64,000 nucleotides of DNA, taken from IMG/VR virus record IMGVR_UViG_3300017917_002434, positions 186,001-250,000 of that record; one strand, written 5' to 3'. Position numbers and translations under genes: made by a program. This document shows, in pieces, positions 7,721 to 55,345 of the stretch (the stretch's first letter is position 1; every line of letters begins with the position of its first letter). Under the pieces are notes generated by a model. The model was given only the letters and a program-made list of their open reading frames with translations, was not told the DNA's origin and ran no database searches.

Positions 7721-7744
7721 TGGTATCGAAGATCGGAGTAATCG

Positions 7745-18150: not shown

Positions 18151-19092
18151 ATGGAACAACGCTCTAAAGCATTTTTTCTAAACGGCGGAGCAGGCCGTAT
18201 GATTTGTGCTATCCCTGCTTTTGAAAAATACGAACAAGAGTCTGGCGATAAAGACTTTATTATCATCTGCGAAGGCGGAACAGATGTATTCAAAGGACAC
18301 CCGACCCTTGATGCTAGAACCTATGATATCTGGCACAAACACCTTTTTAAAGAAAAGATCAAAGATCGAGATATCGTAAGTCCGGAACCTTATCGCATCT
18401 GGGAATACTATAACCAGAAATGTTCTATAGCACAGGCGTTCGATATCGAAATTAACAGAAAAGGTATTCGGAGCCTTCCCAAACCTACATTAATCTTAAG
18501 CAAGGATGAATTGCTTACTGGTCGCAAACTTATCAACGATGTTAAAAAACAACTAAAAAAGAATAAAATAGTTATCTTCCAACCGTTTGGTAGAGGTATT
18601 CAAGTTATCGATGATACCCCTATAGATTCAACTAGCCGTAGTATTGAATTTAAAGATGTAAAGGCTTTAATCAAAAAATTACAAGAAAAAGATTTTGGTG
18701 TAGTTTTAATGAGTGAGTTTAAGATAGATTTTACTGATGAAAAATTCAAAGATGAAATCGCTATGCCAGAAAATGTAACTATGCGTCAGTGGGCCGCAAT
18801 TATCAAATATGCTGATCATTTTTTAGGCTGCGACAGTTTAGGGCAACATCTAGCATATTGTGTAGATAAACCTGCTACAGTGTTGTTCGGATCAACATAT
18901 CCTATTAATGTGTCGTATCCAGATTGTAAATCATTTACTATCCTAGACATGGGTGAAGATTTACGTGAATATAGTCCTATCAGAATTACCATGGATGAAC
19001 GCATTGATAGAAAACACGAACCTATAATGACAATGACTCCAGAAATACAAAATTACGTTGTAGAAGCCGTACAAGGGAAACATAAAAAATGA
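18151..19092 (+). CDS. Glycosyltransferase family 9 (ADP-heptose heptosyltransferase-like)
   Basis: N-terminal 'GGAGRMICAIPA' and C-terminal GT9 signature 'WAAIIKYADHFLGCDSLGQHLAYCVDKPATVLFGST.P' (cf. DSG..HLA.A...P...LFG.T). Confidence 0.7.
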   Translation: MEQRSKAFFLNGGAGRMICAIPAFEKYEQESGDKDFIIICEGGTDVFKGHPTLDARTYDIWHKHLFKEKIKDRDIVSPEPYRIWEYYNQKCSIAQAFDIEINRKGIRSLPKPTLILSKDELLTGRKLINDVKKQLKKNKIVIFQPFGRGIQVIDDTPIDSTSRSIEFKDVKALIKKLQEKDFGVVLMSEFKIDFTDEKFKDEIAMPENVTMRQWAAIIKYADHFLGCDSLGQHLAYCVDKPATVLFGSTYPINVSYPDCKSFTILDMGEDLREYSPIRITMDERIDRKHEPIMTMTPEIQNYVVEAVQGKHKK

Positions 19093-20897
19093 CAGAACCT
19101 AAACTTAATTCTGGCTGGATAGCAGCCATAGCACGTGGGCATAATGCCGGTGTGTGTCTTTTTAAGGATGGAGAAGTAGTATTTTCTATAGAAGAAGAAA
19201 GATTAACACGACAAAAATATGACGGCGGCCCTTTAGCATCGATGGTTAAAATTTTAGAGTACACAGATAAATTAGACTATCTAGTTATCGCACATACTCA
19301 AAAACTACAAGACACTGCCGGACGCATCGATTACAGCGGTGATGATATGTACACAGGTCTAGCTAGAAAACTAGGCCTAATTAGCAGAAAAGAAAATAAT
19401 TTCAACCATCCGCAGGTAGTTGATTTAAGTTTTATGCATCATAAGCTACATGCTGCCTGTGCTTTTTATCGATCAGGGTTTGACGATGCTGTCGCACTGA
19501 TTGTAGACGGTGCTGGGACATTCATCCAATTGATGTATGGCAACGAACCGTTATGGGTTTGGGAAATTGAATCTATCATCGACTGCGATTATCCGTCGCA
19601 GTTTACGACTCTTTATAAAAATTATGGTGCTCGTGAACCAATCGCTGGCACATACATGGACAAGTGCCCGTCGGATCAGTTCGGTGAAGCTGGAAAATTC
19701 CACGAAGCATGGCTTTCGGATAGAGCAGGTATAGTTAAAACCTACGAGGCTGTCACCGAATATTGTGGGTTCTCGGCTATCGAAGCAGGGAAAACCATGG
19801 GATTATTTCCCTATGGTAAACCTAACGATAAAATTCCTAAGTTGTTCGATTTTACTTCGAAGGTTCCGTTGTCTAATAGGAATCTAATCGTGCCTGCCTA
19901 TCCATCTTCTTCTATAGTTAACAGTGCTTTGTTTGACTATCTAGATGAAGTACCTGTAGAAGGTGAAGATGTTACTAAATTACAGAGTCGTAGAGACCTA
20001 GCCTACGCTTGCCAGACTCAAACACAAGAACAGGTAGTTCGTTTAATTCGTAAAGCAGTTGAAATAAGCGGAAAGAAGAATGTAGTAATCAGCGGAGGCT
20101 ACGGATTAAATTGTGTAGCAAATTATCATTATCTAGAACAGCTAAAAGATGAAGGCATCAAGATTTATGTTGAGCCTATCAGTAATGATGCTGGTACTGC
20201 TATGGGTGCTGGAATGATGTTCTGGAGAGCTTTGTCGGATAGCAGAGAAAAACAAAAATTGGATACTCTGTATCTAGGTCCTGAGTATACATATTCTGAT
20301 AGAGAAATCCAAGAAAAAGTTAATTATGCTGGCGGAGAAGTTGTAGATGCTACTAATAAAGATGTTGTAAAACTACTCCGTGAAAAGAACATTGTGACGA
20401 TCTTTCAAGGCCGTTCAGAAAATGGTCCACGTGCTCTAGGAAACCGTTCTGTGCTGTTTGACCCAACATTCGAAGACGGTAAAGATTTTGTCAATACTGT
20501 AAAACGTAGAGAGTATTTCCGCCCATTTGCCGGTAGTATTATACACGATCACGTACATGATTGGTTCGATCTCAGAGGCATGGACGAAACCCCCCATATG
20601 ATGTACGCTGTAAATTGTAAGCCCGGGGTAGCAGAAAAAATTCCTAGTATTATACATGTCGACGGCACATGTAGAATACAGAGTGTAAAACGTGATCAAA
20701 ATCCTCACTACTACGATCTTATCAAAGAATTCTACGATCAAACAGGAATTCCTATCATTTTTAACACCAGCTTTAATCTAGGCGGCGATCCACTAGTTGA
20801 AACGCTAGACGATGCTATCGAGACATTGGTTAAGAGTGATATCGAGTATCTGTTTTTACCTGAATACGGTAAGCTGATCAAGATCGCTAATAGCTAA
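19089..20897 (+). CDS. O-carbamoyltransferase, NodU/CmcH/TobZ family
   Basis: Motifs EEERLTRQK, HH..HA..AFY, VDGAG, GKTMGL.PYG, SGG..LNCVAN, DAGTA.GA, GRSE.GPRALGNRS, KRRE.FRPFA, HVDGTCR.Q, NTSFN; ATGA overlap with the GT9 stop. Confidence 0.93.
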   Translation: MTEPKLNSGWIAAIARGHNAGVCLFKDGEVVFSIEEERLTRQKYDGGPLASMVKILEYTDKLDYLVIAHTQKLQDTAGRIDYSGDDMYTGLARKLGLISRKENNFNHPQVVDLSFMHHKLHAACAFYRSGFDDAVALIVDGAGTFIQLMYGNEPLWVWEIESIIDCDYPSQFTTLYKNYGAREPIAGTYMDKCPSDQFGEAGKFHEAWLSDRAGIVKTYEAVTEYCGFSAIEAGKTMGLFPYGKPNDKIPKLFDFTSKVPLSNRNLIVPAYPSSSIVNSALFDYLDEVPVEGEDVTKLQSRRDLAYACQTQTQEQVVRLIRKAVEISGKKNVVISGGYGLNCVANYHYLEQLKDEGIKIYVEPISNDAGTAMGAGMMFWRALSDSREKQKLDTLYLGPEYTYSDREIQEKVNYAGGEVVDATNKDVVKLLREKNIVTIFQGRSENGPRALGNRSVLFDPTFEDGKDFVNTVKRREYFRPFAGSIIHDHVHDWFDLRGMDETPHMMYAVNCKPGVAEKIPSIIHVDGTCRIQSVKRDQNPHYYDLIKEFYDQTGIPIIFNTSFNLGGDPLVETLDDAIETLVKSDIEYLFLPEYGKLIKIANS

Positions 20898-26100: not shown

Positions 26101-29100
26101 CGATCTCTGGTATCAGTAGAGCAGAGGGAGCGTTTGTCTTAGTAACTATCCCGACTCCTACTACATTTACATATTTTGCCAAGTCTAGAGTAGGTACTAC
26201 CTCAGGAACCAGTTTAAAAACTACCTATACTCAGATTAGAAAAGGCGGATTTTACACAGGGGCATCCATAGGTTTACCGACTATCAACTTGTTATCTAAC
26301 GGGACATCGGGAACTTTTGTAACACAATTTGATACTCCGGCTGCGACATCTCGAATAGCTATCGCCAGCGGTAATATTCCAAGCGTAGGATCACCTATGA
26401 ATGCCGCAGTAGGTATCGGGTTTGGTTCTCAGGTCACTGCCGTAGTCGGTGCTGGGGGTGTCGTAGTGACTCCCACTGTGTTAGGGGACTATGCTCCAAC
26501 ACTATTAGGTCTTACTACTCTTACCGTAGCTAGTACCAGCGGTATAGTGATTGGTTTAGGTGCCAATGATCAGACTGGATCGTCGACGTTCGTTGAATCT
26601 ATAGTAGGAACTAATGTAACATTTACTAGACCTTTTTCCGGTGCTGTGATAGGAAATACCACTACCTATACAGAATTAACCGGAACCAACGAAATATCTA
26701 TCGGTTCAGCAGCAACATTCAATGTCGTTGGTAGCTCGGCAGGTTACATTTCTGTAGCCGTTAATTCAGGAGGCAGCGATTATCAAGTAGGAGATGTATT
26801 AAGAATAGTAGGAACTGATCTTACAGGAACAACGCCAGCTAACGATCTATTGATCAAAGTAGCTACAGTATCCGGTGGTGCTATTTTAACTGCCGACGTT
26901 ATTTCTGGAACTAGTGTAATGTCGTCACCTAACGAAACTATTAGCGGCATTAATAATAGTTCTTATACTGCTACTAGTCCAGACAGTACCATAGGTTCTG
27001 GAGCTACTTTTGACGTAACTAGAAACGGCACAGCTTTTACATCAGTAATCAATGCCGGTGGTACTGGATACGTCAAGGGAACAGAGTTTCTAATCTTAGG
27101 AACTGTATTTACAAATAACACTACTCCGGCTAACGATGTAGAAATCACAGTTACCCAGACCACAGCAACATTTACTGGTCTATTACAAGATGCGACTACA
27201 CTATCTGGTAGCTCGGCACAATTTAGTATAACTAGGATCGGTGCTACCTATACCAGTTTGGTAGTTTCATTCGCTGGTAGCGGTTATGCCCTAGGAGAGA
27301 TCGTTACGATCTACGGAACCCAACTAGGGGGCAACAATCCTTCAAACGATCTTCAGATCCAGGTTGACAACGTAGGCGGGGGCGGTGAAATTATCGCAGC
27401 GTCGCTGGTCAGCGGACTTGTAGCTAATGAAGATGCTCCTGGTGTAATTTCTCAGATATCTACCGCAGGTACAGGTGATAATAGAACAACTATTAATAAT
27501 GTCCCAGTTCTAATAGTTCCAGGATCAGGAATTAACTGTGAATTTTCTATAACTAGAACCGCCAGCGGTTATACAAACGTAGTAGTAACAGATGGAGGCA
27601 CTGCCTACCTACCAGGAAATAGAATTAGGATCCTAGGCAGCGACCTTGGGGGAGCAAACACAACTAATGATGCTATTGTTTCAGTGACTTCTGTTGACTC
27701 TATCACCGGAGCAATTACCGCAGCTACAGTAACTGGAACTGGTGTAGCAGGTATCAATTTACAGTTATATTCATCTGTGACTCTCAGCGAATTTACTACA
27801 GCTACTATAGCTTCGAGTACCAGCCTAGGCTTTGGTACCCTAGCGACTTTACAGATAATTTTTCAAGAGCCGCATGGTATACCACCCGGGGGATCATTTA
27901 TCGTTACTGTGAGTTCAGACAACGGATCTAACAATCATGCGTTAGCCAATGGATCTTTCTCTGCTACTCAGATACCTACAAGAAACACTATTACTTTCCA
28001 GGCTAGATCTCCGGGCGTTATCACAGGAGCACCTATTACCGGAGTCGTATACCCAAGACCGGACAGTTTCTTCACACATAGACCGTTTGACGGCGGTGTA
28101 CAACTAGGTACTGGCGGTCCACAACACGGTGTACAGGCTATACGACAGAGTAAAAAATATATTCGTTATCAATCTGGTAAAGGTGTAATGTATACAACGG
28201 GTGCTCTGTTTGCTCCAAGTTATGATGTATTGTCTATATTGGCAACAGATGTCGAAGTTGGAGCTACCATAGAAATCACCTTAGGTGATAATGATCACGG
28301 GTTACAGCGTGGTGCTGTGATTAGACTCAGCGGAGTCTTAACTGGAGGTTACGATGGCGATTATGAAGTAGATGAAATCGTCAGCGAACGTACATTTAGA
28401 ATAATCGCTACGAAGCGTGTAGGTTCTAGAAAACCGTCATTGAGCTTCAGCTGTCAAATTTCTACACTACGTTGGAAGGGTGCGGTAGTACGTGCCGGAG
28501 TGTTTGATGATCAAAATGGAATATTCTGGGAATATGACGGACAGACATTATGGGCCGTTCAGCGTACTTCTACTAAACAATTAGCAGGTACGATCTCAGT
28601 TAACGCTGGCTCAAACAGGATCACAGGACTGAACAGTAGATTTAGAGATCAATTAAAAGCCGGTGACGCTGTTACTATCAGAGGTATGACACACATCGTA
28701 ACTCACGTCGACAGCCAAACTTCGATGACTGTTAACCCAGATTATCGCGGCGTCAGCAATGTGTCAAACGCTAAGATGAGTTTAATTTCAGAAGTACGTG
28801 TACAACAACGAGATTTCAACAAAGATAGATTAGACGGAACAGGTCCTAGCGGATACGATCTAGATATTACCAAGATGCAGATGATCGGAATCCAATATTC
28901 ATGGTACGGTGCTGGTTTTATTGACTTCATGTTGCGAGGATCTGATGGAAATTATGTGTTCGCCCATAGAATGAGAAATTCGAATATCAATACCGAAGCT
29001 TATATGAGAACAGGTAACTTGCCTGTGAGATATGAAGTTTCAAACTACGGTGCGACCAGCAGATTAGTTGGAGACATTGGAAACACATCTACAGAGTTAA

Positions 29101-31232
29101 CTCTCGAAAGCATAGCAGGATTCCCTACTACGGGAATCGTTTATATCGATAACGAAATGATTTCGTACACTGGAGTTAATACCAGCCAGAACAAACTCAC
29201 AGGGTGTACTAGATCAGCACAGTTAGATCTATTCATTGCTGGTGCTAATAGAAATTTTACCGCAGGGGTAGCTGCTAATCACAGCAACGGTACAGGTGTA
29301 ATTTTAATGAATAACACTACAACACCTTTGATTAGCCACTGGGGTAGTGCGTTCTTGACCGACGGATTGTTTGATTTTGACCGTGGATACATTTTCAACT
29401 ATGCTTCTACCGGTCTAAGTGTAAGCACTGTTAAATCAACGGCTTTCCTAATTCGTCTAGCACCTAGTGTGTCAAACGCAGTTGTTGGAGATCTAGGCGA
29501 TAGAGAGCTCCTAAATAGAGCACAATTACTATTGAAAGAAATCGCAGTAACGTCAGACACAGGCTCGGGCGGTATTATTGTTGAGGGAGTATTAAATCCT
29601 CAGAATTATCCTTCTAATCCTAGCGACATTGTTTGGTCAGGTTTGTCCGGTGTTGCGGCCGGTGGTCAGCCTAGCTTCGCTCAGATAGCACCAGGAGGAT
29701 CTGTAAACTGGTCAGGCGGCGTAGCCCAACCAACAGCTACAGCCACAGCATTAAACACAGTTACCGCCAATATCACTGTACCAAATAAAACAGCATTCAA
29801 TAGACCTGCTGGTACATCATTCGTCTATGTTACACAGACTAGCTGGAATACATCAGGATCCCAGAGTGGTTTCGCTATAGCAGCTTCAGATACTAAATTC
29901 CAGTCTGGTACAACAATTTCATCCGTAGCTTCGAGTCCTAGTCCAGTAGCCACGACATTAGGAATATTAACTTCTAGTATGTCTACATTCTTTAGAAGTA
30001 TATCGGGTAATAGTATCAGCGGTAACGGTATTACTGCCACATTGAACTTTAACAACCAAGGATACGTACCGTTTCCAGTAAATTCGAGAATAACTGTTAG
30101 TGGTTTCAGTGCTTATAATGGAACTTATATCGTAACTGGAGCAGGAAATAACTTTGTACAGTTTGCCTCTACGTCGACTAACTTCCAAACAAACGGAACA
30201 GTCCAGACTGCTTACGTCGCTGGGCAGACAACATTGAACATAACAGAAGCTAGTTGGAATAACATGACTAGCCCTGTAACACAGACAGGATTTGGCGTAA
30301 CATCTTCATTTCCGGCAGGAACAACTGTCACTGGAGTTACATCGATACAAGGAACATCGCCGAACAGATACTATACCGTGACATTCAGTCAGGGTCTTAC
30401 TTCTGATTTACCGTTATCATCTACGACTATCAATACCAGTTTTGGTGGAGCAAGAACAAGCACAAATAACCTATTCTTTACCGCAGCTAGTTGGACAGCA
30501 TTACCAGTAGATGTTCCGGTTAACGGCACACTGACTAATGATCCTACCAAATTTACTGGCGGAACTATTATCAACTCTATCAGCGGCCTACAGACATTTG
30601 GCGGTACTGGATACTATTCTGTATCATTTAGTAACAACTGTATAGGAACATTAGCAGGCGGAACAACTGTCACATTTGATACTATACCTTATTTTACTCT
30701 GTTCTTGAGTAGAACTTCGGCACAGGCTGTTAATGCTAATGCCACTATAACTATGTCATTGGCACAAAACTCTGCTGTCACCAACTTTGTGTATTTTACA
30801 CAGGCCAGTTGGGAAACTCTAGTTTCGACCTATTCAGCAGGTGCCGGTACAGAAGTAGCAGATACAAAATTTGCTGCGGGTACTCGTGTTGCTACTGTGA
30901 GTACTCTAAGAACGTTTGGTGGTTCTGGATATTATGTAGTAACATTTACCCAGACGTCTAATGCTGTTGTGGCTGGCGGAAACACTATTACATTTAGATT
31001 TGGACAACCTCCATATGCGTTACCGGGCGAACAGGTATTCTCATTCATCAGTTTACCAGGAAGTTCGGACAGTCTTAACCTAGAGGACCTCAAAGAATTA
31101 ACCAATACTACCTTGGGTGGTAGAGGTACATTCCCTAACGGTCCTGACGTTTTGGCTATCAACATCTTCAAAGTATCTGGAGCAGCAGTTAACGCTAACG
31201 TAATTCTACGTTGGTCCGAAGCACAAGCCTAA
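23151..31232 (+). CDS. Giant virion structural protein (2693 aa) with five N-terminal CxRD helical repeats and Thr/Gly/Ser-rich beta repeats
   Basis: AAGGA SD; 'LLLITNTTKN..IYNF', 'DADFEYGLQPTKW', 'RYQSGKG', 'IQYSWYGAGFIDF' blocks typical of large T4-like virion proteins; repeated 'GG..Y..G..(I/L).I.G..LGG....ND'. Confidence 0.7.
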   Translation: MAKRKIDNYTFRPGISYLGNLYPDEWQSFSDNVPFIKAELTAYLNYRIDIDTEVNLYPNAVRILENNINFIKEEATAWIATQVAGNFPGFVGYTYDSAKCKRDIGFVLTAYIHDVRYGGNEDTRTIVGKYWINNEPQVDGDRQAEVKTHEFIRDLITDYILPLASYTPLQLIATRYTTGPAAEANAAARIDTLSAITTTVIANGLSSMPAISYKSAPYENYTFNSEKCQRDLGYVLDAYLHDLRYGGNEQTRLTIQKYYDNGVLQVDGSGQAEVEGHEFVRDLIINNIMQNEAGTILYPEAVRLLTLNKAYLQNEILGWIANEVTEATKCERDIGYLIDGAQYDIVLGTNYNALFLGLAEFNSLDNDFFVIDTIQRTKTAIAALPNVAASTAAVARNNAFFNEVVDIIQNGRGSANELVLAEPSNATVSRIAAKNQLVANKNFLAAEVNAWVAEQYPTADHDPVKCSRDVKYAIDALCYDILYGGNSATYDQARFFFYGFSSGAPGIDPTHRLQTVAAYVHLKQVIGQVVQNQTVTKTTGNTLTQNQTFPAASSSDAIICQNLVQITADVVAATTQTQANTILSGIVRSVPSITFATSALQTAFNAITTAKTSVINSVVVFKGYTYDSAKCIRDSGFVIDALIYDLENNGNEESRRIAQKYYIDGVFQVDGSRIPEIASYRFLQETIKNYIFPRVNAPDYQIVYPQILTAPSAEVGAYARITELTDVFINFLKDGPSSLPALSQRTVPYQTVEQQVVDTTKAYDPDAGTAILALSNALVNIIEQGLGALPVKESAGYGLIKFQGVVRLEDLLLITNTTKNVVIYNFSSNTAGGEIVPEFDGDDDFIAFKQVTDRVIHLRLNVDTSTMDETDELQIFAEAPEMKVRPYDFGTDAIERHRVASPQSMLDADFEYGLQPTKWQAIGIARGYPSVYEVPGSDFEVVSITTDASFPNNGVGASTITVTTAAPHGLSAGTPVTVAGLDTAISGISRAEGAFVLVTIPTPTTFTYFAKSRVGTTSGTSLKTTYTQIRKGGFYTGASIGLPTINLLSNGTSGTFVTQFDTPAATSRIAIASGNIPSVGSPMNAAVGIGFGSQVTAVVGAGGVVVTPTVLGDYAPTLLGLTTLTVASTSGIVIGLGANDQTGSSTFVESIVGTNVTFTRPFSGAVIGNTTTYTELTGTNEISIGSAATFNVVGSSAGYISVAVNSGGSDYQVGDVLRIVGTDLTGTTPANDLLIKVATVSGGAILTADVISGTSVMSSPNETISGINNSSYTATSPDSTIGSGATFDVTRNGTAFTSVINAGGTGYVKGTEFLILGTVFTNNTTPANDVEITVTQTTATFTGLLQDATTLSGSSAQFSITRIGATYTSLVVSFAGSGYALGEIVTIYGTQLGGNNPSNDLQIQVDNVGGGGEIIAASLVSGLVANEDAPGVISQISTAGTGDNRTTINNVPVLIVPGSGINCEFSITRTASGYTNVVVTDGGTAYLPGNRIRILGSDLGGANTTNDAIVSVTSVDSITGAITAATVTGTGVAGINLQLYSSVTLSEFTTATIASSTSLGFGTLATLQIIFQEPHGIPPGGSFIVTVSSDNGSNNHALANGSFSATQIPTRNTITFQARSPGVITGAPITGVVYPRPDSFFTHRPFDGGVQLGTGGPQHGVQAIRQSKKYIRYQSGKGVMYTTGALFAPSYDVLSILATDVEVGATIEITLGDNDHGLQRGAVIRLSGVLTGGYDGDYEVDEIVSERTFRIIATKRVGSRKPSLSFSCQISTLRWKGAVVRAGVFDDQNGIFWEYDGQTLWAVQRTSTKQLAGTISVNAGSNRITGLNSRFRDQLKAGDAVTIRGMTHIVTHVDSQTSMTVNPDYRGVSNVSNAKMSLISEVRVQQRDFNKDRLDGTGPSGYDLDITKMQMIGIQYSWYGAGFIDFMLRGSDGNYVFAHRMRNSNINTEAYMRTGNLPVRYEVSNYGATSRLVGDIGNTSTELTLESIAGFPTTGIVYIDNEMISYTGVNTSQNKLTGCTRSAQLDLFIAGANRNFTAGVAANHSNGTGVILMNNTTTPLISHWGSAFLTDGLFDFDRGYIFNYASTGLSVSTVKSTAFLIRLAPSVSNAVVGDLGDRELLNRAQLLLKEIAVTSDTGSGGIIVEGVLNPQNYPSNPSDIVWSGLSGVAAGGQPSFAQIAPGGSVNWSGGVAQPTATATALNTVTANITVPNKTAFNRPAGTSFVYVTQTSWNTSGSQSGFAIAASDTKFQSGTTISSVASSPSPVATTLGILTSSMSTFFRSISGNSISGNGITATLNFNNQGYVPFPVNSRITVSGFSAYNGTYIVTGAGNNFVQFASTSTNFQTNGTVQTAYVAGQTTLNITEASWNNMTSPVTQTGFGVTSSFPAGTTVTGVTSIQGTSPNRYYTVTFSQGLTSDLPLSSTTINTSFGGARTSTNNLFFTAASWTALPVDVPVNGTLTNDPTKFTGGTIINSISGLQTFGGTGYYSVSFSNNCIGTLAGGTTVTFDTIPYFTLFLSRTSAQAVNANATITMSLAQNSAVTNFVYFTQASWETLVSTYSAGAGTEVADTKFAAGTRVATVSTLRTFGGSGYYVVTFTQTSNAVVAGGNTITFRFGQPPYALPGEQVFSFISLPGSSDSLNLEDLKELTNTTLGGRGTFPNGPDVLAINIFKVSGAAVNANVILRWSEAQA

Positions 31233-31236: not shown

Positions 31237-31264
31237 TTGACAATCAGACTTTTTGCTGTATAAT
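31237..31264 (+). promoter_or_regulatory. sigma70 consensus (early) promoter of the heptose operon
   Basis: TTGACA (31237-31242), 16 nt, TATAAT (31259-31264); predicted +1 at about 31271, the ATG. Confidence 0.8.
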
Positions 31265-31270: not shown

Positions 31271-31666
31271 ATGAGTCTGATTTTTGTTAACGGTTCTTTT
31301 GATATACTTCATCCAGGACACATCGAACTGCTAAACTATGCCAAAAGTTTAGGATCTCATCTCATGGTTGCCATAGATTCGGACGCTAGAATTACTAGTT
31401 TAAAAGGACCGACTCGGCCTATTAACAATCAACGTTATAGAGCGTTCATGTTAAAAAATCTTAGAGCAGTGGACGAAGTAGTAATTTTTGATTCTGACCA
31501 AGAATTAATAAACTTGATCGCTGCCTGTGATATAATGGTAAAAGGCAGCGACTATATGGGTAAACCTATCGTAGGCGAAGAAGTCTGCGATGAAATTATA
31601 TTTTTTGATAGATTATATGACTATTCAACAACAAAAATCATTCAAGATATTGTTAATCGGAGATGA
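31271..31666 (+). CDS. hldC: D-glycero-beta-D-manno-heptose 1-phosphate adenylyltransferase (RfaE domain II)
   Basis: 'NGSFDILHPGH' (HxGH), 'DSD..I..LKG..RPIN', 'VKGSDY', 'YSTT.II'; start moved to ATG 31271. Confidence 0.85.
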   Translation: MSLIFVNGSFDILHPGHIELLNYAKSLGSHLMVAIDSDARITSLKGPTRPINNQRYRAFMLKNLRAVDEVVIFDSDQELINLIAACDIMVKGSDYMGKPIVGEEVCDEIIFFDRLYDYSTTKIIQDIVNRR

Positions 31667-32366
31667 TTGTTCTGATGTGTATCAATATGGCACAGTTGAA
31701 AGGTTAAGTCCCGAAGCACCCGTGCCGGTATTTGTTCCTACCCACAAAGAAACACGGCCTGGAATGGCCGGTAATGTATCTAAGAATCTCGAAGCACTAG
31801 GGTGTGAAGTAAATTATATTCATGCTAAAACATCCACTAAAACGAGACTGATAGATAAACGCAGTAATCAACATATTGCTAGGATAGATAATGACGAAAT
31901 GTCTGAACCTATATCGTTCGAAACTGAAATACCTAAAATTTACGATGCTATTGTCGTCAGCGACTACAACAAAGGCACAGTCACATATGAACTCATCGAA
32001 GAGTTAATTGATACTAAAATTCCTGTGTTTATCGACACTAAAAAAATTGATCTAGAAAGATTCCAGGGCAGCTGGGTGAAAATTAACGCTGCTGAGTATA
32101 GACTAATTAAAAGTGAATGTACAGGATTGATCGTAACACTAGGTGAGGACGGTGCTCGAGTTATTCATCATGATATTCACTACCCAGCACCTAAAGTAGA
32201 AATCAGCGATGTCTGTGGTGCCGGAGATACATTTTTGGCTGCTCTAGCTTATAGATATTGCGAAACAAAAGACATCGACGAAGCTGTTAAGTTTGCTATC
32301 AAAGCAGCCAGTATCACAGTCCAGCATCTAGGTAATTACGCACCAACATTAGAGGAAATAAAATGA
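31617..32366 (+). CDS. hldA: D-glycero-D-manno-heptose 7-phosphate kinase (RfaE domain I, PfkB family)
   Basis: 'IGD...D.Y.YG.V.RLSPEAPVPV', 'G.AGNV..NL.ALG', 'VSDYNKG', 'DVCGAGDTF'. Confidence 0.85.
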   Translation: MTIQQQKSFKILLIGDDCSDVYQYGTVERLSPEAPVPVFVPTHKETRPGMAGNVSKNLEALGCEVNYIHAKTSTKTRLIDKRSNQHIARIDNDEMSEPISFETEIPKIYDAIVVSDYNKGTVTYELIEELIDTKIPVFIDTKKIDLERFQGSWVKINAAEYRLIKSECTGLIVTLGEDGARVIHHDIHYPAPKVEISDVCGAGDTFLAALAYRYCETKDIDEAVKFAIKAASITVQHLGNYAPTLEEIK

Positions 32367-32743
32367 CAGAAAGACTTACAGGAAAAGTAGATAAAGGATG
32401 GGGCTTTGAAATTATATGGGCTACCAACGATCACTATTGCGGAAAAATTTTAGTATTCGAAAAGGCAGGAAATAAGTTTTCTATGCACTTCCATAAAACC
32501 AAAGATGAAACTTGGTTTGTTAATTCTGGCAAATTTAAATTACGTTGGATAGATACTAAAGATGCTAAAATCTATGAACAAGAATTAAATGAAGGCGATA
32601 CTTGGCATAATCCTCCTTTACAACCTCATCAATTAGAAGCCATGACAGATGGTGCTATGGTGTTTGAAGTCAGCACAGCAGATTCTATAGAGGATAATTA
32701 TCGATTAGTACCCGGAGACAGTCAAAAGAAAGCAGAACAATGA
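32363..32743 (+). CDS. Cupin-fold sugar isomerase-like protein
   Basis: 'KGWG.E', 'SMHFH..KDETW.V..G', 'P..PH.L.A', 'EVST.D...DNYR' cupin metal motifs; translationally coupled on both sides. Confidence 0.75.
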   Translation: MTERLTGKVDKGWGFEIIWATNDHYCGKILVFEKAGNKFSMHFHKTKDETWFVNSGKFKLRWIDTKDAKIYEQELNEGDTWHNPPLQPHQLEAMTDGAMVFEVSTADSIEDNYRLVPGDSQKKAEQ

Positions 32744-33228
32744 ACATATATCTAGACATGGACGATGTTGTAGCTGATTGGTTTGGCTACGCTAGAGAGT
32801 ATCTCAATGAGCCACTGTTCAAAGATGGTGACATATTGCCCGAAGCTACTTGGCAAAAATTAAAAAATGATCAGCGTATGTATAGTAAACTTCCTGTTAA
32901 AAAGGGAGCATATGATTTAGTCAACTGGTGTAGAAATTATAGAGATACAAAAAACGCAGGACTTTATTTTCTCAGTGCTATCCCCAAAGGCAATGATATG
33001 CCCTGGGCACCTCAAGATAAAGTTTTTTGGGCACATGAATATTTTCCTGACATCCCTGTATTTTTAGGTCCATATAGTTTTGATAAGTGGGTTAGATGTT
33101 CTCCTGGAGATATCCTAATAGATGATCGTAGATCAAATTGTGAAGATTGGGAACGTGCCGGGGGCCTATCACACATATACCGCTCTTGGCCGGAATGTAA
33201 ACTTTGGTTAGAGGACATTCTAAAATGA
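32740..33228 (+). CDS. HAD-superfamily phosphatase, 5'(3')-deoxyribonucleotidase-like
   Basis: 'IYLDMDDVVADW' (DxD motif I), 'FLSA', 'K..W', 'ILIDDR..N...W..AGG'. Confidence 0.75.
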   Translation: MNIYLDMDDVVADWFGYAREYLNEPLFKDGDILPEATWQKLKNDQRMYSKLPVKKGAYDLVNWCRNYRDTKNAGLYFLSAIPKGNDMPWAPQDKVFWAHEYFPDIPVFLGPYSFDKWVRCSPGDILIDDRRSNCEDWERAGGLSHIYRSWPECKLWLEDILK

Positions 33229-34115
33229 TCATAGTAACTGGTGGTGCCGGCTTCATTGGTTCTAATATTATAAAAGGTCTAAATGATAGATCTATTTCAA
33301 ATATTATTGTTGTTGATGATATTAATCCCGATAAAGAAAAAAATCTAGAAGATTTAAAATTTTCAGATATACTTTCCCCTCAAGATTTCTACGGCATCTG
33401 GAATCACTGGCACATCGTTGATGCGGTATTTCACGAAGGTGCTATATCATCTACCACAGAAAAAGATCAAAATAAGATAGATCAGTATAATCTTCAACCC
33501 GGTTATTGGCTAGTAGAGCAGGCTGCTAGAAACAATTTTTTATTATCTTATGCTAGCTCTGCTTCAGTCTACGGTGACAGCAATACCTTTAAAGAAAAAC
33601 AGCCACTAAATCCTCAATCGCTTTATGCTACTAGTAAAATGCTGTTAGATCAATATGTCTATAGCACATTATTAGATTATCCTGATACTAGAATACAGGG
33701 TTGGAGATATTTCAACGTCTATGGAAAAAATGAAATTCACAAAAAAGATCAAGCGAGCCCGATAACGAAATTTAGTCAGCAGGCCAAAAATACAGGAAAA
33801 ATAAAAGTTTTTAAAGGCAGCGAAAATTTTCAGCGAGATTTTATCTGTGTCAGCGACATAGCCGATATTAAAATAAAATCATTAGACAAGAACTTTAATG
33901 GAATTTTTAATCTCGGTACAGGAAAAGCAATATCGTTTTTAGAAGTGGCTGAACTGATCAAAGAAAGATATTCGGCGACTATTGAAGAAGTAGAGTTTCC
34001 TCAAGAGCTTATCAATCAATACCAAAAATATACCTGTTCGGATAATACAGAATTATTGAAGGTGATAGGAAATTATGATTTTACGTCTATTAGATCTTTT
34101 CTTTCAACGACATAA
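33225..34115 (+). CDS. hldD: ADP-L-glycero-D-manno-heptose 6-epimerase
   Basis: 'MIIVTGGAGFIGSNI', 'FHEGAISSTTE', 'YASSASVYG', YxxxK (YATSK), 'RYFNVYG..E.HK', 'RDFI.V.D', 'YQKYT'; GAGGA SD before ATG 33225. Confidence 0.85.
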   Translation: MIIVTGGAGFIGSNIIKGLNDRSISNIIVVDDINPDKEKNLEDLKFSDILSPQDFYGIWNHWHIVDAVFHEGAISSTTEKDQNKIDQYNLQPGYWLVEQAARNNFLLSYASSASVYGDSNTFKEKQPLNPQSLYATSKMLLDQYVYSTLLDYPDTRIQGWRYFNVYGKNEIHKKDQASPITKFSQQAKNTGKIKVFKGSENFQRDFICVSDIADIKIKSLDKNFNGIFNLGTGKAISFLEVAELIKERYSATIEEVEFPQELINQYQKYTCSDNTELLKVIGNYDFTSIRSFLSTT

Positions 34116-34347
34116 TTTTCTTTTCTATCTCTAATCTAATATTTTTTAGTCTAGTTCTTTCTTCAGTCTGTCTCGTAAGATTAGAGATCATGTCGATCGA
34201 TTCTACAGCAGCATCTAGATTTTTCGCCTGAGACTTAAATCTCTTATAGAGTTTTTCTAACTCTGTATCTTTAGTTTCTTCGATGAGTTTTTCGTAACGT
34301 CGGCAGTCTTCGATAAAATTTTTACTTTTAGTAATAGATAGTTTCAT
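34090..34347 (-). CDS. Hypothetical coiled-coil protein (85 aa)
   Basis: Charged helical ORF coupled to the upstream minus-strand gene. Confidence 0.5.
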   Translation of the reverse strand: MKLSITKSKNFIEDCRRYEKLIEETKDTELEKLYKRFKSQAKNLDAAVESIDMISNLTRQTEERTRLKNIRLEIEKKIMSLKEKI

Positions 34348-34730
34348 AATGAACTTCCCATTAATAATATTGTGTCGATTTTAGTTTTGATTATTTTATT
34401 AGTTAATGTAGTTTTTAAACCCGTGTGTACACCTTTAGGCAAAACGTCGATCATTGACCAACAAAAAGTTTGATTATTTGACGGGACAAATTCTTGATCT
34501 ACTAAGCAGATGTAAGTAGAAAATTCAAATCCGCTGTCTTGACTAAGATATAATTCTACCGGAACTAACCTAGCATCTTTACCATAGTATTCGTAGATGA
34601 TAGCTTGAGCGTCTTCTACTACAGATTTATCTCTAACAAAGCTAGGAACTGTCCATTTGAGATCTTCTAGTATCATTAAGATTCTAGAAGTTTTTTTTGA
34701 TATAAACAGGATTCCGGCATGTTTCTGCAT
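34344..34730 (-). CDS. Hypothetical protein, possibly degenerate Nudix fold
   Basis: 'AGILF......RIL', 'F.F.TY.C.V..EF.P', 'W.....LPK.(V/L)H.GL' recall phage Nudix proteins but the GX5EX7REUXEE box is missing; start set at MQKHAG, 5 nt after TATATA. Confidence 0.4.
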   Translation of the reverse strand: MQKHAGILFISKKTSRILMILEDLKWTVPSFVRDKSVVEDAQAIIYEYYGKDARLVPVELYLSQDSGFEFSTYICLVDQEFVPSNNQTFCWSMIDVLPKGVHTGLKTTLTNKIIKTKIDTILLMGSSL

Positions 34731-34741
34731 GCCTTTATATA

Positions 34742-36172
34742 TCATCCTTCTAAATCAAAGCTCCAATATCCGGCTGTGTATTCGCCTTCGAAAGATTTAA
34801 GCCATTGGCCGTCTTCCCATTTATATTGGATGCCAGTTTTGAGATTTTTGATATAGTATGGTTGAGAAATTTCAACTGACGGATCAAAGATCACAGTCCA
34901 GTCGGTACCGTTCCATTCTACGATAGAATTAGCGACTGCTACAAAATCTGAATCATCGGAATTTTTCCAAGCATCTGCTCCGTCCGAATTAGCCACCGAA
35001 CCAATATCTTCTAATATAAGATATTTCATACCTACTAATAATCCTGTTGTGGGATCAAATGTTTGAGGATTGATAATAGCATTGATGACTAAATCAGTCT
35101 GCGGCTCAGAATCAGAATCAAAGTCTACTACTAAAAATTGACTGTCTACTTCGTTGATACTAAATGTGCCTACGAGTTCGTAACCACTAGGTTGTAAAAA
35201 TCTAATACGACTAATTCCGGGTCTGTATTTTCCATACTGAGGAATAATTTTATTCCAATCAATCGCCCCAGCGGTTTTCTTAGGTATATCTAGTCCGCTT
35301 TCTACTATAGCCTCGTTGACATCTAAGGCACTGACATAGTAAGAACCAGTCTCAACACCTGTAACTGTCTTAGAAGACAACAGTAATACTCCGAAATTTC
35401 CCGGTGTAGTAATAATAGATGTTGATTTTATGTCTTTATTATCAACTGGACTATTAAACGCTAATTCTGCTAGAGGTTTTAACTGCCCATCATCATCAAA
35501 CATATTCATGATAATGTTCTGTACCACACCAAGTTTCTTAACCTTAACTGGAGGACTGATATAAATCGGCATCTCAAAATCAAGAGAACAGATGTCTATA
35601 TCAACTTCTGTGCCTTGAGGTATAGATCGAGATGTAAAATTTGAAGCGGTTAGTTCGACTACACTTAGGCTGGTCCAATCGATATAATTATCTGTAGTTT
35701 GTACCTCTAGACTGGGGTTGAATAATACTAGTATTTGCTCTAGTAATTGTAATTTTTGATCTGTGTTAGAACTCCAGATGTCTGCCCGCATACTTAATTT
35801 AAAAGGTGTAGGCATTAGTCGTTCAACAGTATAGCCGCCCCCCTGGGTGTTGTTGTATATTGGCTCGCCGGTCTCGTCATCAAAGGATTCATACGATCTT
35901 CCTCGAATACTGACCTTACTAACATAACTAGCATCGGCTAGTCTATTTCTATCTAATTCTATTCCTGTGATATAACACGCGATCTTTGGAACACTAGGCA
36001 GTTTATTTTCTGAATTTTCTCTGATGATCTGTGCTACTTGCTTGGTAAGATCGCCATAGGCAACAGGGACTTGTTTCAGAGATCCGTCGCCGGCTTGGTA
36101 CTTAAAACCAATGAAGATTCTCATAAACTGAGTTACATATCTTCGTATCTGTCCATCATAGAAAAAATCCAT
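34742..36172 (-). CDS. gp15: Tail sheath stabiliser/terminator (T4 gp15-like) with C-terminal extension
   Basis: 'FFYDGQIRRY..QF.R.F', 'VPV.YG', 'MP.P..L....DIW..N.DQKLQ.LEQILVLFNP'. Confidence 0.7.
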   Translation of the reverse strand: MDFFYDGQIRRYVTQFMRIFIGFKYQAGDGSLKQVPVAYGDLTKQVAQIIRENSENKLPSVPKIACYITGIELDRNRLADASYVSKVSIRGRSYESFDDETGEPIYNNTQGGGYTVERLMPTPFKLSMRADIWSSNTDQKLQLLEQILVLFNPSLEVQTTDNYIDWTSLSVVELTASNFTSRSIPQGTEVDIDICSLDFEMPIYISPPVKVKKLGVVQNIIMNMFDDDGQLKPLAELAFNSPVDNKDIKSTSIITTPGNFGVLLLSSKTVTGVETGSYYVSALDVNEAIVESGLDIPKKTAGAIDWNKIIPQYGKYRPGISRIRFLQPSGYELVGTFSINEVDSQFLVVDFDSDSEPQTDLVINAIINPQTFDPTTGLLVGMKYLILEDIGSVANSDGADAWKNSDDSDFVAVANSIVEWNGTDWTVIFDPSVEISQPYYIKNLKTGIQYKWEDGQWLKSFEGEYTAGYWSFDLEG

Positions 36173-53550: not shown

Positions 53551-54002
53551 GTTGGTACGACAAAGTCAGTAAAGATATTTCTTATATTCCAGATGCGGCA
53601 CAATTCTATGAAAACGAATTACAGGCTGCTAAACTAGAATGTAAGATTTTTGGAAATATTGAAAAAGTATCAGCATCAATGCCGGGTATAGTCGAGAATC
53701 GTTTTAATCAACTACAAGAGATTGAAGCGATTCTCGAGTACCTTAATATCGAACTGAGACGTTTAAAAAGCCAACATTTTCGTAAGTATCTAGAAAATTA
53801 TCAGCGTAGCCTAAGTTCAAGAGACTGCGAAAAGTTTGTTGATGGTGAAGCAGATGTTGTTGATTTTGAAAAGATCATCAACGAGTTTGCCTTACTTAGA
53901 AACAAATGGTTAGGTGTTATCAAAGCACTGGATCAGAAACAGTGGCAATTGACTAACATCGTTAAATTACGTGTAGCAGGCATGGAAGACGCCTCTCTTT
54001 AA
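53547..54002 (+). CDS. uvsY: Recombination mediator protein
   Basis: About 150 aa helical protein after uvsX; 'Y...LS.RD.EK.VDGE.D', 'K.LD.K.WQL.NIVKLR.AG'; GTG start. Confidence 0.7.
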   Translation: MSWYDKVSKDISYIPDAAQFYENELQAAKLECKIFGNIEKVSASMPGIVENRFNQLQEIEAILEYLNIELRRLKSQHFRKYLENYQRSLSSRDCEKFVDGEADVVDFEKIINEFALLRNKWLGVIKALDQKQWQLTNIVKLRVAGMEDASL

Positions 54003-54634: not shown

Positions 54635-54655
54635 CTTAAATCCGTTTTAAAACGT

Positions 54656-54673
54656 TATTTAGTTAGATAAATA
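54656..54673. promoter_or_regulatory. Divergent late promoter pair
   Basis: TATTTA 54656-54661 (minus) and TAAATA 54668-54673 (plus). Confidence 0.65.
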
Positions 54674-54694
54674 CTCAGTTAATTAGAGGTTAGA

Positions 54695-55342: not shown

Positions 55343-55345
55343 AGT

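What the first reader, a model, noticed from the sequence alone, without database searches (positions are those of the whole stretch)
32363..33228. Cupin and NT5C-type HAD sit where GmhA and GmhB are missing: possible non-orthologous heptose pathway enzymes
Seen: the operon has kinase, adenylyltransferase and epimerase but no SIS-fold GmhA or GmhB-type (DRDG) phosphatase; a cupin and a DxD HAD phosphatase are instead coupled by overlapping start/stop codons between hldA and hldD. Known: the pathway needs a ketose-aldose isomerase and a bisphosphate phosphatase; cupins include sugar-phosphate ketol-isomerases. Inference: these two ORFs complete a five-step pathway with new enzyme families.
Basis: inference. 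Interest (0 to 1): 0.7.

Follow-up and report, generated by a model that had tools for sequence, protein, structure and literature searches.

The report
Cupin stand-in for phage heptose isomerase
A large freshwater phage carries a tight five-gene operon for the activated sugar ADP-heptose. The usual first enzyme (GmhA) is missing, and a small metal-binding cupin related to mannose-phosphate isomerases sits in its place; comparison with about 200 phage loci suggests the cupin does that job, but no enzyme assay exists.

Summary
Window 31271-34115 (+) holds hldC, hldA, a 126-aa cupin, a 162-aa NT5C-like HAD and hldD. They sit behind a perfect sigma-70-type promoter, and the last four genes are joined by ATGA overlaps. 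The 270-kb record has no SIS GmhA and no GmhB.

The cupin as the missing sedoheptulose-7-P isomerase is well supported, by inference only:
- 104 of 108 distinct family members lie within 3 kb of hld genes.
- 72 of 79 loci sampled from the kinase carry it, and none has GmhA.
- Phage loci sampled from GmhA lack it, with one exception.
- Its nearest folds are the type II phosphomannose isomerase domains, which perform the C6 analogue of the GmhA reaction.
- The 3His-1Glu metal site is invariant in linked copies.
- Natural cupin-HldC and cupin-HAD fusions exist.

The HAD as a GmhB substitute is only plausible. Its slot is filled in relatives by a GmhB-type, a small EcbF/BcbF-like or this NT5C-like HAD, never two. 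However, most members of its family sit elsewhere, near nucleotide-metabolism genes.

The module was already visible in cyanophages such as P-SSM2, where it is misannotated. No biochemistry exists.

The parts
31237..31264 (+). Sigma-70-type promoter-like site (TTGACA, 16-nt spacer, TATAAT; 12 of 12 matches) just upstream of hldC
   Evidence: It is a consensus match only; 14 such sites were found in the region against 13.9 expected, but this is the only perfect one.
31271..31666 (+). hldC: D-glycero-beta-D-manno-heptose-1-phosphate adenylyltransferase-like (HIGH nucleotidyltransferase). The ORF opens at TTG 31253; ATG 31271 is the likely start.
   Evidence: PF01467 E 1.8e-13; TIGR02199 E 5.3e-35 (120 bits, below the 181.5 cut-off).
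31590..32366 (+). hldA: PfkB-type heptose-7-phosphate kinase-like. It overlaps the end of hldC. A second in-frame ATG at 31617 fits the N-termini of relatives better.
   Evidence: PF00294 E 5.8e-20; TIGR02198 E 4.3e-46. Sequence read; relatives' N-termini.
32363..32743 (+). 126-aa single-domain cupin with a 3His-1Glu metal site (H42, H44, E49, H89). Proposed sedoheptulose-7-phosphate isomerase, standing in for GmhA.
32740..33228 (+). 162-aa NT5C-like HAD phosphatase (D6-x-D8, S79, K116, D128-D129). A candidate heptose-1,7-bisphosphate 7-phosphatase, or alternatively an ordinary nucleotidase.
33225..34115 (+). hldD: ADP-glycero-manno-heptose 6-epimerase-like SDR
   Evidence: TIGR02197 E 5.5e-80, 268.9 bits against a cut-off of 274.6. 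PF01370.
18151..19092 (+). GT9 (heptosyltransferase family)-like glycosyltransferase, a likely consumer of ADP-heptose. It is contiguous with the heptose genes in relatives.
   Evidence: PF01075, 22.4 bits against a cut-off of 22 (marginal). The same gene lies next to the carbamoyltransferase and hld genes in L051, L261, L307 and S-CAM1.
19089..20897 (+). NodU/CmcH-type carbamoyltransferase, start/stop-coupled to the GT9 gene. It lies directly upstream of hldC in P-SSM2, S-CAM1 and Sf-FS3.
   Evidence: (PF16861 E 1e-56; PF02543).

Best explanation
The operon encodes a phage-borne route from sedoheptulose-7-phosphate to ADP-L-glycero-beta-D-manno-heptose.

Shown:
- The five genes form one overlapping transcription-unit-like block.
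- hldA, hldC and hldD are close to the curated heptose families.
- No SIS GmhA or GmhB-type gene is in the record.

Inferred, step 1: the cupin is a metal-dependent ketose-aldose isomerase. It would convert sedoheptulose-7-P to D-glycero-D-manno-heptose-7-P through an ene-diol bound at its His42/His44/Glu49/His89 metal site. This is the C7 counterpart of the fructose-6-P to mannose-6-P reaction of the type II phosphomannose isomerase cupins, its nearest structural relatives.

Inferred, steps 2 to 5:
- HldA phosphorylates O1.
- A HAD phosphatase removes the 7-phosphate. Here that is the NT5C-like one; relatives use a GmhB-type or a small EcbF/BcbF-like one. This step is the least certain, and it may be done by a non-dedicated phosphatase.
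- HldC adenylylates.
- HldD epimerises C6.

The product is probably used by the phage's GT9-like transferase and modified by the adjacent carbamoyltransferase. The acceptor is unknown.
For: Linkage:
- 56 of 62 IMG/VR loci found with the cupin carry hldA/C/D beside it.
- In an independent sample found with the kinase, 72 of 79 loci carry the cupin, mostly overlapping a neighbouring gene, and 0 of 79 carry GmhA.
- 104 of 108 distinct cupin sequences lie within 3 kb of an hld gene.
- In G022 (94% complete) the cupin is about 207 kb from hldA/hldD, but all are present.

Complementary distribution with GmhA:
- 0 of 50 cupin-bearing records have SIS_2. These include complete S-CAM1 and Sf-FS3; P-SSM2 and S-SM2 are also negative.
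- No cyanophage matches E. coli GmhA among 50,697 phage records.
- About 30 of 80 viral loci found with GmhA have hldA/hldC next to it, and only one (L120) has the cupin.
- The complete GmhA-bearing genomes G080, G082 and Cr30 have no cupin.
- The positive control for SIS_2 scored 5 of 5.

Fold and residues:
- The cupin model has pLDDT 94.
- Its top 17 Swiss-Prot structure matches are all the isomerase cupin domain of ManC/RfbM/XanB/AlgA, with TM 0.76-0.78 and rmsd about 2 A.
- PDB matches include phosphomannose and D-lyxose isomerases.
- The family profile aligns to E. coli ManC residues 350-478 with 92% probability.
- 30 of 64 family members hit PF01050 and 28 hit the D-lyxose isomerase family.
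- H42, H44, E49, H89, K28, E16, D111 and R114 are invariant in all 104 linked copies. One unlinked copy has lost H42 and E49.

Fusions: cupin+HldC (P0330, P0369), NT5C-like HAD+cupin (P0253) and HAD+cupin (P0315).

Phosphatase slot:
- Among linked loci the partner is GmhB-type in 23, NT5C-like in 16, small HAD in 13 and none in 52. Two kinds are never present together.
- The GmhB-type copies best match PRK08942 (E 1e-28 to 1e-40).
- Relatives with a cupin 93-94% identical to the window's carry the small HAD in exactly this slot.
- The NT5C-like HAD sits next to the cupin in at least four different gene orders.
- A divergent clade of it (100/99 support) is found only in loci that carry heptose genes: 7 members adjacent to them, 2 about 6 kb away.

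Substrate: a C6 epimerase only makes sense for a heptose, and HldD scores 268.9 against a cut-off of 274.6.

Hosts: cyanobacterial LPS lacks heptose (PMC4390846, PMC4515613), so the cultured cyanophages with this module probably cannot rely on a host pathway.
Against: - No enzyme of this cupin family has been assayed. Fold and metal site are shared with non-isomerase cupins such as oxalate decarboxylase, quercetinase, KdgF and the CapF C3-epimerase domain.
- The window's own cupin does not reach E 0.01 for PF01050.
- L120 carries the cupin together with GmhA, a GHMP heptose kinase and an HldC-like gene, although its near-twin L123 lacks the cupin.
- The cupin also co-varies with hldD, which is rare in GmhA-type phage loci. 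That is a confound.
- The record is 76% complete and the host is unknown. The sample is a freshwater pond, and no psbA was found. A Gram-negative host could supply heptose-7-P.
- For the HAD: 67 of 79 loci of its family have no heptose gene within 8 kb. Homologues at about 60% identity lie beside ribonucleotide reductase, glutaredoxin or dNMP kinase genes. The window's copy is nested among unlinked ones and is 80% identical to L152. Its fold is that of deoxyribonucleotidases.
- Half of the linked loci show no HAD at all.
Confidence: 0.55

Rival explanations
1. The cupin is a tailoring enzyme and not the isomerase. It would be a metal-dependent epimerase or isomerase acting on ADP-heptose or on the keto-intermediate of HldD, like the CapF/WbjC C3-epimerase cupin domain. 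Heptose-7-P would then come from the host's GmhA.
For: - CapF and WbjC cupin domains are among the fold matches.
- There is a weak WbuC-family hit.
- The cupin is very often adjacent to hldD, and some loci carry two hldD-like SDR genes around it.
- hldD is rare in GmhA-type phage loci.
- L120 has both GmhA and the cupin.
- The host of this freshwater phage is unknown.
Against: - The best structural neighbours are sugar-phosphate and aldose-ketose isomerases, not nucleotide-sugar epimerases.
- Cultured carriers infect picocyanobacteria, whose LPS lacks heptose.
- This reading does not explain why phages with the kinase, transferase and epimerase never carry GmhA when the cupin is present.
- E. 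coli and most bacteria run HldD without such a cupin.
- Cupin-HldC fusions mirror the isomerase-nucleotidyltransferase layout of ManC.
Confidence: 0.2
2. The NT5C-like HAD is the phage's ordinary 5'(3')-(deoxy)nucleotidase and happens to sit in the operon. The 7-phosphate is removed by a host or non-specific phosphatase, as in leaky E. coli gmhB mutants. This is compatible with the cupin being the isomerase.
For: - 67 of 79 family loci are unlinked to heptose genes.
- Neighbours elsewhere are ribonucleotide reductase, glutaredoxin and dNMP kinase genes.
- The best fold matches are deoxyribonucleotidases.
- The window's copy is 80% identical to the unlinked L152 copy and nested among unlinked copies.
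- It is the only copy in the record.
- 52 of 104 cupin loci have no HAD.
- A dNMP kinase-like gene lies about 5 kb away in this synteny.
Against: - It occupies exactly the slot held by a small HAD in phages with a 93-94% identical cupin.
- It never co-occurs with the other two HAD kinds in 104 loci.
- It is adjacent to the cupin in several different gene orders.
- A natural HAD-cupin fusion exists.
- One divergent clade is confined to heptose-bearing loci.
Confidence: 0.4
3. The operon makes an activated hexose (ADP-mannose or a derivative), and the cupin is a plain phosphomannose isomerase.
For: The cupin's nearest relatives are phosphomannose isomerases. JGI names homologues 'mannose-6-phosphate isomerase-like'.
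Against: - HldD scores almost at the equivalog cut-off for the heptose 6-epimerase, and C6 of mannose is not a stereocentre.
- HldA and HldC best match the RfaE domains.
- The same window already has a separate, much more typical PMI cupin fused to a nucleotidyltransferase in another sugar cluster.
- GmhB-type phosphatases accompany the cupin in relatives.
Confidence: 0.05
4. The cupin is an oxygenase, as in the GenBank annotation 'cysteine dioxygenase', that hydroxylates or oxidises a sugar or peptide. It would act like the many 2OG-dioxygenases in these clusters.
For: RefSeq names the cyanophage homologues cysteine dioxygenase. Quercetinase and other dioxygenases are among the fold matches. 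2OG-oxygenases are interleaved in some relatives.
Against: - There was no Pfam or NCBIfam hit to cysteine dioxygenase.
- The specific family signals are PMI and lyxose isomerase.
- The tight, conserved coupling is to hldA/C/D and not to the dioxygenases.
Confidence: 0.05

Closest known systems
GmhA (LpcA), SIS-fold D-sedoheptulose-7-phosphate isomerase, EC 5.3.1.28
   Same: The proposed reaction and the position in the pathway: first step, upstream of HldA/HldE. It has a complementary distribution with the cupin in phage heptose loci.
   Different: The fold is unrelated: a flavodoxin-like SIS domain of about 190 aa against a 126-aa beta-barrel cupin. No sequence similarity; SIS_2 and TIGR00441 give nothing in the record.
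Type II phosphomannose isomerase cupin domain of bifunctional GMP/PMI enzymes (ManC/CpsB, RfbM, XanB, AlgA; Pfam PF01050)
   Same: - Best structural match: TM 0.76-0.78 over about 115 residues.
- Profile alignment with 92% probability.
- Shared W-G, Lys, metal-ligand and E...D motifs.
- The chemistry yields the manno configuration at C2.
- Natural fusions to a nucleotidyltransferase exist in both.
   Different: - Only 19-24% identity.
- The first metal ligand is His here and Gln in ManC.
- Stand-alone and shorter.
- The window's copy is below E 0.01 for PF01050.
- It is linked to heptose genes and not to mannose genes.
- The fused nucleotidyltransferase is of the HIGH/cytidylyltransferase type and not the GMP type.
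GmhB, HAD-IIIA D-glycero-D-manno-heptose-1,7-bisphosphate 7-phosphatase
   Same: The role proposed for the window's HAD. GmhB-type genes fill the same operon slot next to the cupin in 23 related loci. Both belong to the HAD superfamily with the DxD nucleophile motif.
   Different: The window's HAD gives no hit to GmhB, histidinol-phosphatase or HAD-IIIA models. It has a small helical cap, as deoxyribonucleotidases do.
NT5C family 5'(3')-deoxyribonucleotidases (human mdN/cdN; S. epidermidis 3bwv)
   Same: Best sequence and fold match of the HAD. Most phage homologues sit in nucleotide-metabolism or early-gene contexts.
   Different: The score is below the Pfam gathering cut-off (22.7 against 24.8). 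About a fifth of the sampled homologues are embedded next to the cupin in heptose operons, and one is fused to it.
Heptose-related 'LPS genes' of T4-like cyanophages (P-SSM2 genes 308-313; T4-GC 303-308; S-CAM1, S-SM2, S-SSM7, P-TIM68, S-T4 and others)
   Same: The same module: carbamoyltransferase, hldC, hldA, small HAD, cupin, hldD. The cupin is 38-42% identical. Iyer and colleagues (PMC7824862) mention cupin-fold sugar isomerases, PfkB kinases and HAD phosphatases in such clusters in general terms.
   Different: In the window the gene order is cupin then HAD, and the HAD is of the NT5C type. Database names differ from what the sequences show: the small HAD is labelled 'phosphoheptose isomerase', and the cupin 'cysteine dioxygenase' or 'nucleotidyltransferase'. 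No paper in the searched library links a cupin to the GmhA step.
Other cupin sugar isomerases: archaeal cupin phosphoglucose isomerase and D-lyxose/D-mannose isomerase (2y0o, 7nzo), T. kodakarensis PMI (7zvy)
   Same: Single cupin barrel, His/His/Glu/His metal site and aldose-ketose isomerisation. They appear among the fold matches, and 28 of 64 family members hit the Lyx_isomer family.
   Different: Larger proteins (170-190 aa, except 7zvy), acting on C5/C6 substrates, with no link to heptose genes.

Membership tests
GmhA (SIS-fold sedoheptulose-7-P isomerase) | SIS domain detectable by PF13580 or TIGR00441 | tested here: not met
   There is no match in the cupin or anywhere in the record. 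The cupin is an all-beta barrel. It is therefore not a GmhA family member; only a functional analogy is proposed.
GmhA (function, EC 5.3.1.28) | Interconverts sedoheptulose-7-P and D-glycero-D-manno-heptose-7-P | not testable with these tools
   This needs an enzyme assay or complementation of a gmhA mutant. The only support here is genomic context and fold.
Cupin superfamily | Beta-barrel with motif 1 G-x5-H-x-H-x3,4-E-x6-G and motif 2 ending in H | tested here: met
   G36...H42-x-H44...E49...G56 and H89 were read. Cupin_2 E 1.4e-8. The model has 11 strands at pLDDT 94.
Type II phosphomannose isomerase domain (PF01050) | Score above the Pfam gathering cut-off (23.6 bits) | tested here: not met
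   The window's cupin does not reach E 0.01. Thirty of 64 family members do hit at E <= 0.01, and some exceed the cut-off, for example P0253 at 31 bits. It is a sister family, not a member.
Type II phosphomannose isomerase domain (PF01050) | Structural superposition and conservation of the W-G, Lys, metal-ligand and E/D motifs | tested here: met
   TM 0.76-0.78 with rmsd 1.7-2.3 A to ManC/AlgA/XanB domains. The hhalign match has 92% probability and aligns W13-G14, K28, H44, E49, H89 and E102; H42 aligns to Gln.
GmhB (HAD-IIIA heptose-1,7-bisphosphate phosphatase) | Match to TIGR00213, PRK08942 or HAD-IIIA models; D-x-D-G-T/V motif with a capless core | tested here: not met
   The window's HAD has no NCBIfam hit, and none was found in the record. 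HAD ORFs of relatives in the same slot do match.
NT5C 5'(3')-deoxyribonucleotidase family (PF06941) | Pfam gathering score; HAD motifs I-IV; deoxyribonucleotidase-like cap | tested here: inconclusive
   The score is 22.7 bits against a cut-off of 24.8. Many close homologues carry the precomputed PF06941 hit. The best folds are 3bwv, mdN and cdN with TM 0.6-0.72. Substrate preference was not testable.
ADP-L-glycero-beta-D-manno-heptose pathway (HldA, HldC, HldD) | Kinase, adenylyltransferase and 6-epimerase matching the curated equivalog models | tested here: inconclusive
   The best hits are the right models, but all fall below the trusted cut-offs: TIGR02198 157 against 345, TIGR02199 120 against 181, TIGR02197 269 against 275. 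HldD is near-equivalog; the kinase is shortened (258 aa).

The most novel reading that the evidence does not exclude
A phage-borne cupin family is a second, non-homologous fold for sedoheptulose-7-phosphate isomerase. With it, phages could build ADP-heptose from pentose-phosphate or Calvin-cycle sedoheptulose-7-P. This would include phages of picocyanobacteria, whose own envelope has no heptose. The phosphatase step would be filled interchangeably by three unrelated HAD families. The product would feed a phage GT9 transferase and a carbamoyltransferase that decorate a phage or host surface target.
Probability: 0.5. Interest if true: 0.75.

Novelty: new variant of a known kind. Interest (0 to 1): 0.62.

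Why it matters
ADP-heptose is the donor for the LPS inner core and for protein heptosylation, and it is a potent innate-immune signal. Its first step is currently assigned to a single enzyme family, GmhA.

A cupin isozyme would add a case of analogous enzymes. It would correct annotations carried since 2005 in model cyanophages: 'phosphoheptose isomerase' is a phosphatase, and 'cysteine dioxygenase' is the likely isomerase.

It would also mean that these phages install a complete heptose pathway in hosts that may have none. That raises the question of what they heptosylate. The idea can be tested directly with two small soluble proteins and existing E. coli mutants.

Tried and rejected
- Direct PDB sequence search with the cupin gave only generic cupins, mainly oxalate decarboxylase, which did not discriminate. 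For the HAD it gave one weak deoxyribonucleotidase hit.
- A weak tblastn hit of Cr30 GmhA in the record (C1:69866-70069, E 0.007) is an 81-aa ORF without the GNGGS motif. I rejected it as spurious.
- Searches of bacterial genomes for the cupin:
  - The single-protein scan found one 1.5-kb MAG contig, probably phage.
  - So the bacterial context could not be examined.
- I could not reach genomes of Prochlorococcus or marine Synechococcus to test directly for host gmhA. I relied on reviews stating that cyanobacterial LPS lacks heptose.
- Thirty records holding unlinked NT5C-like HADs were searched for the cupin. Most are fragments (4-65% complete), so 27 negatives of 30 are not informative.
- Literature searches for cupin with sedoheptulose, heptose, GmhA or ADP-heptose found nothing relevant.
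I repeated it without them.
- No complex prediction or read mapping was run; neither would change the conclusion.
Full report
**What is there**

The window is bases 186001-250000 of a 269,730-bp IMG/VR virus record, estimated 76% complete. It is a T4-like myovirus: a gp15 tail-sheath stabiliser lies at 34742-36172 on the minus strand, and gp13 and a dNMP kinase-like gene lie in the same synteny in relatives. Near-identical DNA occurs in pond, lake, river, lagoon and aquaculture metagenomes. No psbA was found, so the host is unknown.

On the plus strand a perfect TTGACA-16-TATAAT site (31237-31264) precedes five genes:
- hldC, 31271-31666
- hldA, 31590-32366
- a 126-aa cupin, 32363-32743
- a 162-aa HAD, 32740-33228
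- hldD, 33225-34115

The last three junctions are ATGA overlaps. HldC, HldA and HldD best match the RfaE domain II, RfaE domain I and ADP-glyceromanno-heptose 6-epimerase models. HldD scores 268.9 bits against a trusted cut-off of 274.6.

The record contains no SIS_2, gmhA, GmhB or histidinol-phosphatase-type HAD. A weak GmhA-like tblastn hit proved spurious.

**The module is widespread and already sequenced, but misnamed**

The cupin has more than 1,300 close homologues in aquatic metagenomes and 38-45% identical homologues in cultured cyanomyoviruses. These include S-CAM1, S-CAM3, P-SSM2, P-SSM5, S-SM2, S-SSM7, P-TIM68, S-T4, Bellamy, Sf-CH5/8 and Sf-FS3. That is essentially the same set of phages that carries the HldA-like kinase.

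In P-SSM2, S-CAM1 and Sf-FS3 the order is carbamoyltransferase, hldC, hldA, a 107-aa protein labelled 'phosphoheptose isomerase', the cupin (labelled 'cysteine dioxygenase' or 'nucleotidyltransferase'), and hldD. The 107-aa protein has no SIS signal. It is a small HAD related to the EcbF/BcbF capsule phosphatases (TIGR01689, E 2e-8).

So these phages have no annotated isomerase that stands up to inspection. A review of jumbo phages mentions 'cupin fold sugar isomerases', PfkB kinases and HAD phosphatases in cyanophage sugar clusters in general terms (PMC7824862). I found no paper that ties a cupin to the GmhA step.

**Evidence that the cupin is the isomerase: linkage**

Sampling IMG/VR from the cupin, 56 of 62 loci have hldA/C/D beside it. 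Sampling independently from the kinase, 72 of 79 loci have the cupin, usually overlapping its neighbour, and none has GmhA. Pooled, 104 of 108 distinct cupin sequences lie within 3 kb of an hld gene. In the 94%-complete G022 the cupin is unlinked, but hldA and hldD are still in the genome.

**Evidence that the cupin is the isomerase: complementarity with GmhA**

- None of 50 cupin-bearing records has SIS_2, and neither do complete P-SSM2 and S-SM2.
- No cyanophage among 50,697 phage records matches E. coli GmhA.
- Of 80 viral loci found with GmhA, about 30 have hldA/hldC and often a GmhB next to it, and only one (L120) has the cupin.
- The complete GmhA-type genomes G080, G082 and Cr30 lack the cupin.
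- The SIS_2 search recovered GmhA in 5 of 5 positive controls.

**Evidence that the cupin is the isomerase: structure and residues**

The AlphaFold model is confident (pLDDT 94). Its 17 best Swiss-Prot structure matches are all the C-terminal isomerase domain of the bifunctional mannose-1-P guanylyltransferase/phosphomannose isomerases ManC, RfbM, XanB and AlgA. Solved phosphomannose and D-lyxose isomerases are also among the PDB matches.

The family profile aligns with E. coli ManC 350-478 at 92% probability, matching the W-G, Lys, metal-ligand and Glu positions. Half of the family members hit PF01050 and the D-lyxose isomerase family.

Fructose-6-P to mannose-6-P is the C6 analogue of sedoheptulose-7-P to D-glycero-D-manno-heptose-7-P. 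This follows from the established chemistry of both enzymes.

The metal ligands H42, H44, E49 and H89, together with K28, E16, D111 and R114, are invariant in all 104 linked copies, which diverge to about 40% identity. One unlinked lineage has lost H42 and E49.

**Evidence that the cupin is the isomerase: fusions**

Natural proteins join the cupin to HldC in both orders (P0330, P0369), echoing the isomerase-nucleotidyltransferase layout of ManC. Others join it to HAD phosphatases (P0253, P0315).

**Evidence that the cupin is the isomerase: a separate mannose cupin**

The same window holds a second, much more typical PMI cupin (PF01050, 70.8 bits; 33% identical to ManC). It is fused to a nucleotidyltransferase in a separate sugar cluster (57637-58404). 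The heptose-operon cupin is therefore not simply the phage's mannose enzyme.

**The phosphatase**

Among the 104 linked loci the partner HAD is as follows:
- GmhB-type in 23 (best NCBIfam hit PRK08942, E 1e-28 to 1e-40)
- NT5C-like in 16
- the small EcbF/BcbF-like type in 13
- none detected in 52

Two kinds never occur together. Phages whose cupin is 93-94% identical to the window's have the small HAD in exactly the slot the NT5C-like HAD occupies here. The NT5C-like HAD abuts the cupin in several different gene orders. In a maximum-likelihood tree, a long-branched clade (100/99 support) occurs only in heptose-bearing loci. This pattern is what non-orthologous displacement of a pathway step looks like, and established E. 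coli work shows gmhB to be the most dispensable step.

Against this:
- The family as a whole lives elsewhere. 67 of 79 loci have no heptose gene within 8 kb.
- Homologues at about 60% identity lie beside ribonucleotide reductase, glutaredoxin or dNMP kinase genes.
- The window's copy is nested among unlinked copies, 80% identical to L152.
- The model is a deoxyribonucleotidase-type HAD.

I therefore rate the HAD's role as plausible but not established.

**Downstream use**

The window also encodes a GT9-like glycosyltransferase (18151-19092, marginal Pfam score) start/stop-coupled to a NodU-type carbamoyltransferase (19089-20897). In L051, L261, L307, S-CAM1 and P-SSM2 these genes are contiguous with the heptose genes. 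That suggests a heptosyl transfer followed by carbamoylation.

The acceptor is unknown. A 2,693-aa ORF (23151-31232) lies between the two gene groups here, and tail-fibre or giant structural genes flank the module in relatives. This is only suggestive.

**Weak points**

- There is no biochemical evidence for any member of the cupin family.
- Cupin folds and 3His-1Glu sites also serve decarboxylases, dioxygenases and the CapF C3-epimerase.
- L120 has both GmhA and the cupin, although its near-twin L123 lacks the cupin.
- The cupin co-varies with hldD as well as against gmhA.
- This genome is incomplete and its host may have its own pathway.
- I could not scan host or other bacterial genomes.

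**Verdict**

The cupin as a GmhA analogue is the best-supported reading (about 0.55-0.6). The HAD as a GmhB analogue stands at about 0.4-0.45. This is a new variant of a known pathway, not a new kind of system, and it can be tested directly.

Noticed in passing
window 53999-61449: A second nucleotide-sugar cluster. It holds two GT8 glycosyltransferases, two or three methyltransferases, a GDP-mannose-4,6-dehydratase-like SDR (55346-56245) and a UDP-glucose/GDP-mannose dehydrogenase fragment-like ORF (56809-57597, minus strand). It also holds a 255-aa fusion of a cytidylyltransferase-like domain with a classical type II phosphomannose isomerase cupin (57637-58404; PF01050, 70.8 bits).
   Followed up: partly
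L001 7077-7400; L002 8854-9180; L312 3676-4020; L313 7050-7361 and 8691-9020: The proteins labelled 'phosphoheptose isomerase' in the GenBank/RefSeq records of S-CAM1 and Sf-FS3 have no SIS domain and are about 107-aa HAD phosphatases (TIGR01689-like). The equally labelled genes of P-SSM2 and S-SM2 belong to the same T4-GC 306 cluster but were not scanned. The neighbouring cupin is labelled 'cysteine dioxygenase' or 'nucleotidyltransferase'. These appear to be propagated misannotations.
   Followed up: yes
window 23151-31232: A 2,693-aa ORF lies immediately upstream of the heptose operon. Equivalent 2,300-2,700-aa ORFs flank the module in relatives (L012, L017, L033, L229). It may be a virion fibre and a candidate glycosylation target. 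It was not analysed.
   Followed up: no
L120 13362-13751 versus L123: Two near-identical phage contigs differ by the presence or absence of a stand-alone cupin of this family. Both carry GmhA embedded among Fe-S cluster assembly genes (IscU/IscA-like), a GHMP-type heptose kinase and an HldC-like gene.
   Followed up: partly
L068 2217-3116 (protein P0253): A natural NT5C-like HAD + cupin fusion protein sits in a T4-like replication module, between regA/clamp-loader genes and a large ORF of at least 837 aa that runs off the contig end (unscanned). No hld gene is on the 6-kb contig.
   Followed up: partly
L061-L063, about 8001-8396: A cupin lineage not linked to hld genes has lost two metal ligands (H42 to V, E49 to K). 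It lies next to a ClpP-like gene, and may be a non-catalytic or repurposed paralogue.
   Followed up: no
L012 4254-4694; L017 5591-6034; L033 4830-5345: In relatives with a fused HldE, the ORF directly upstream of hldE is a NUDIX hydrolase in L012 (PF00293, E 1e-15) and looks similar by sequence in L017 and L033. 2OG-Fe(II) oxygenase genes are interleaved between hldE, hldD and the cupin in L012. The window's syntenic 133-aa ORF (34344-34745, minus strand) gave no Pfam hit.
   Followed up: partly
L313 (S-SM2) 1-12921: S-SM2 has an expanded cluster around the module: a transketolase-like gene (a possible sedoheptulose-7-P source), a class II aldolase, a second sugar pyrophosphorylase, two small HADs and four glycosyltransferases.
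   Followed up: no
G000:C1:71216-71650 (outside the window): A second, stand-alone cytidylyltransferase-like gene (27% identical to HldC) lies in the replication region of the same phage.
   Followed up: no
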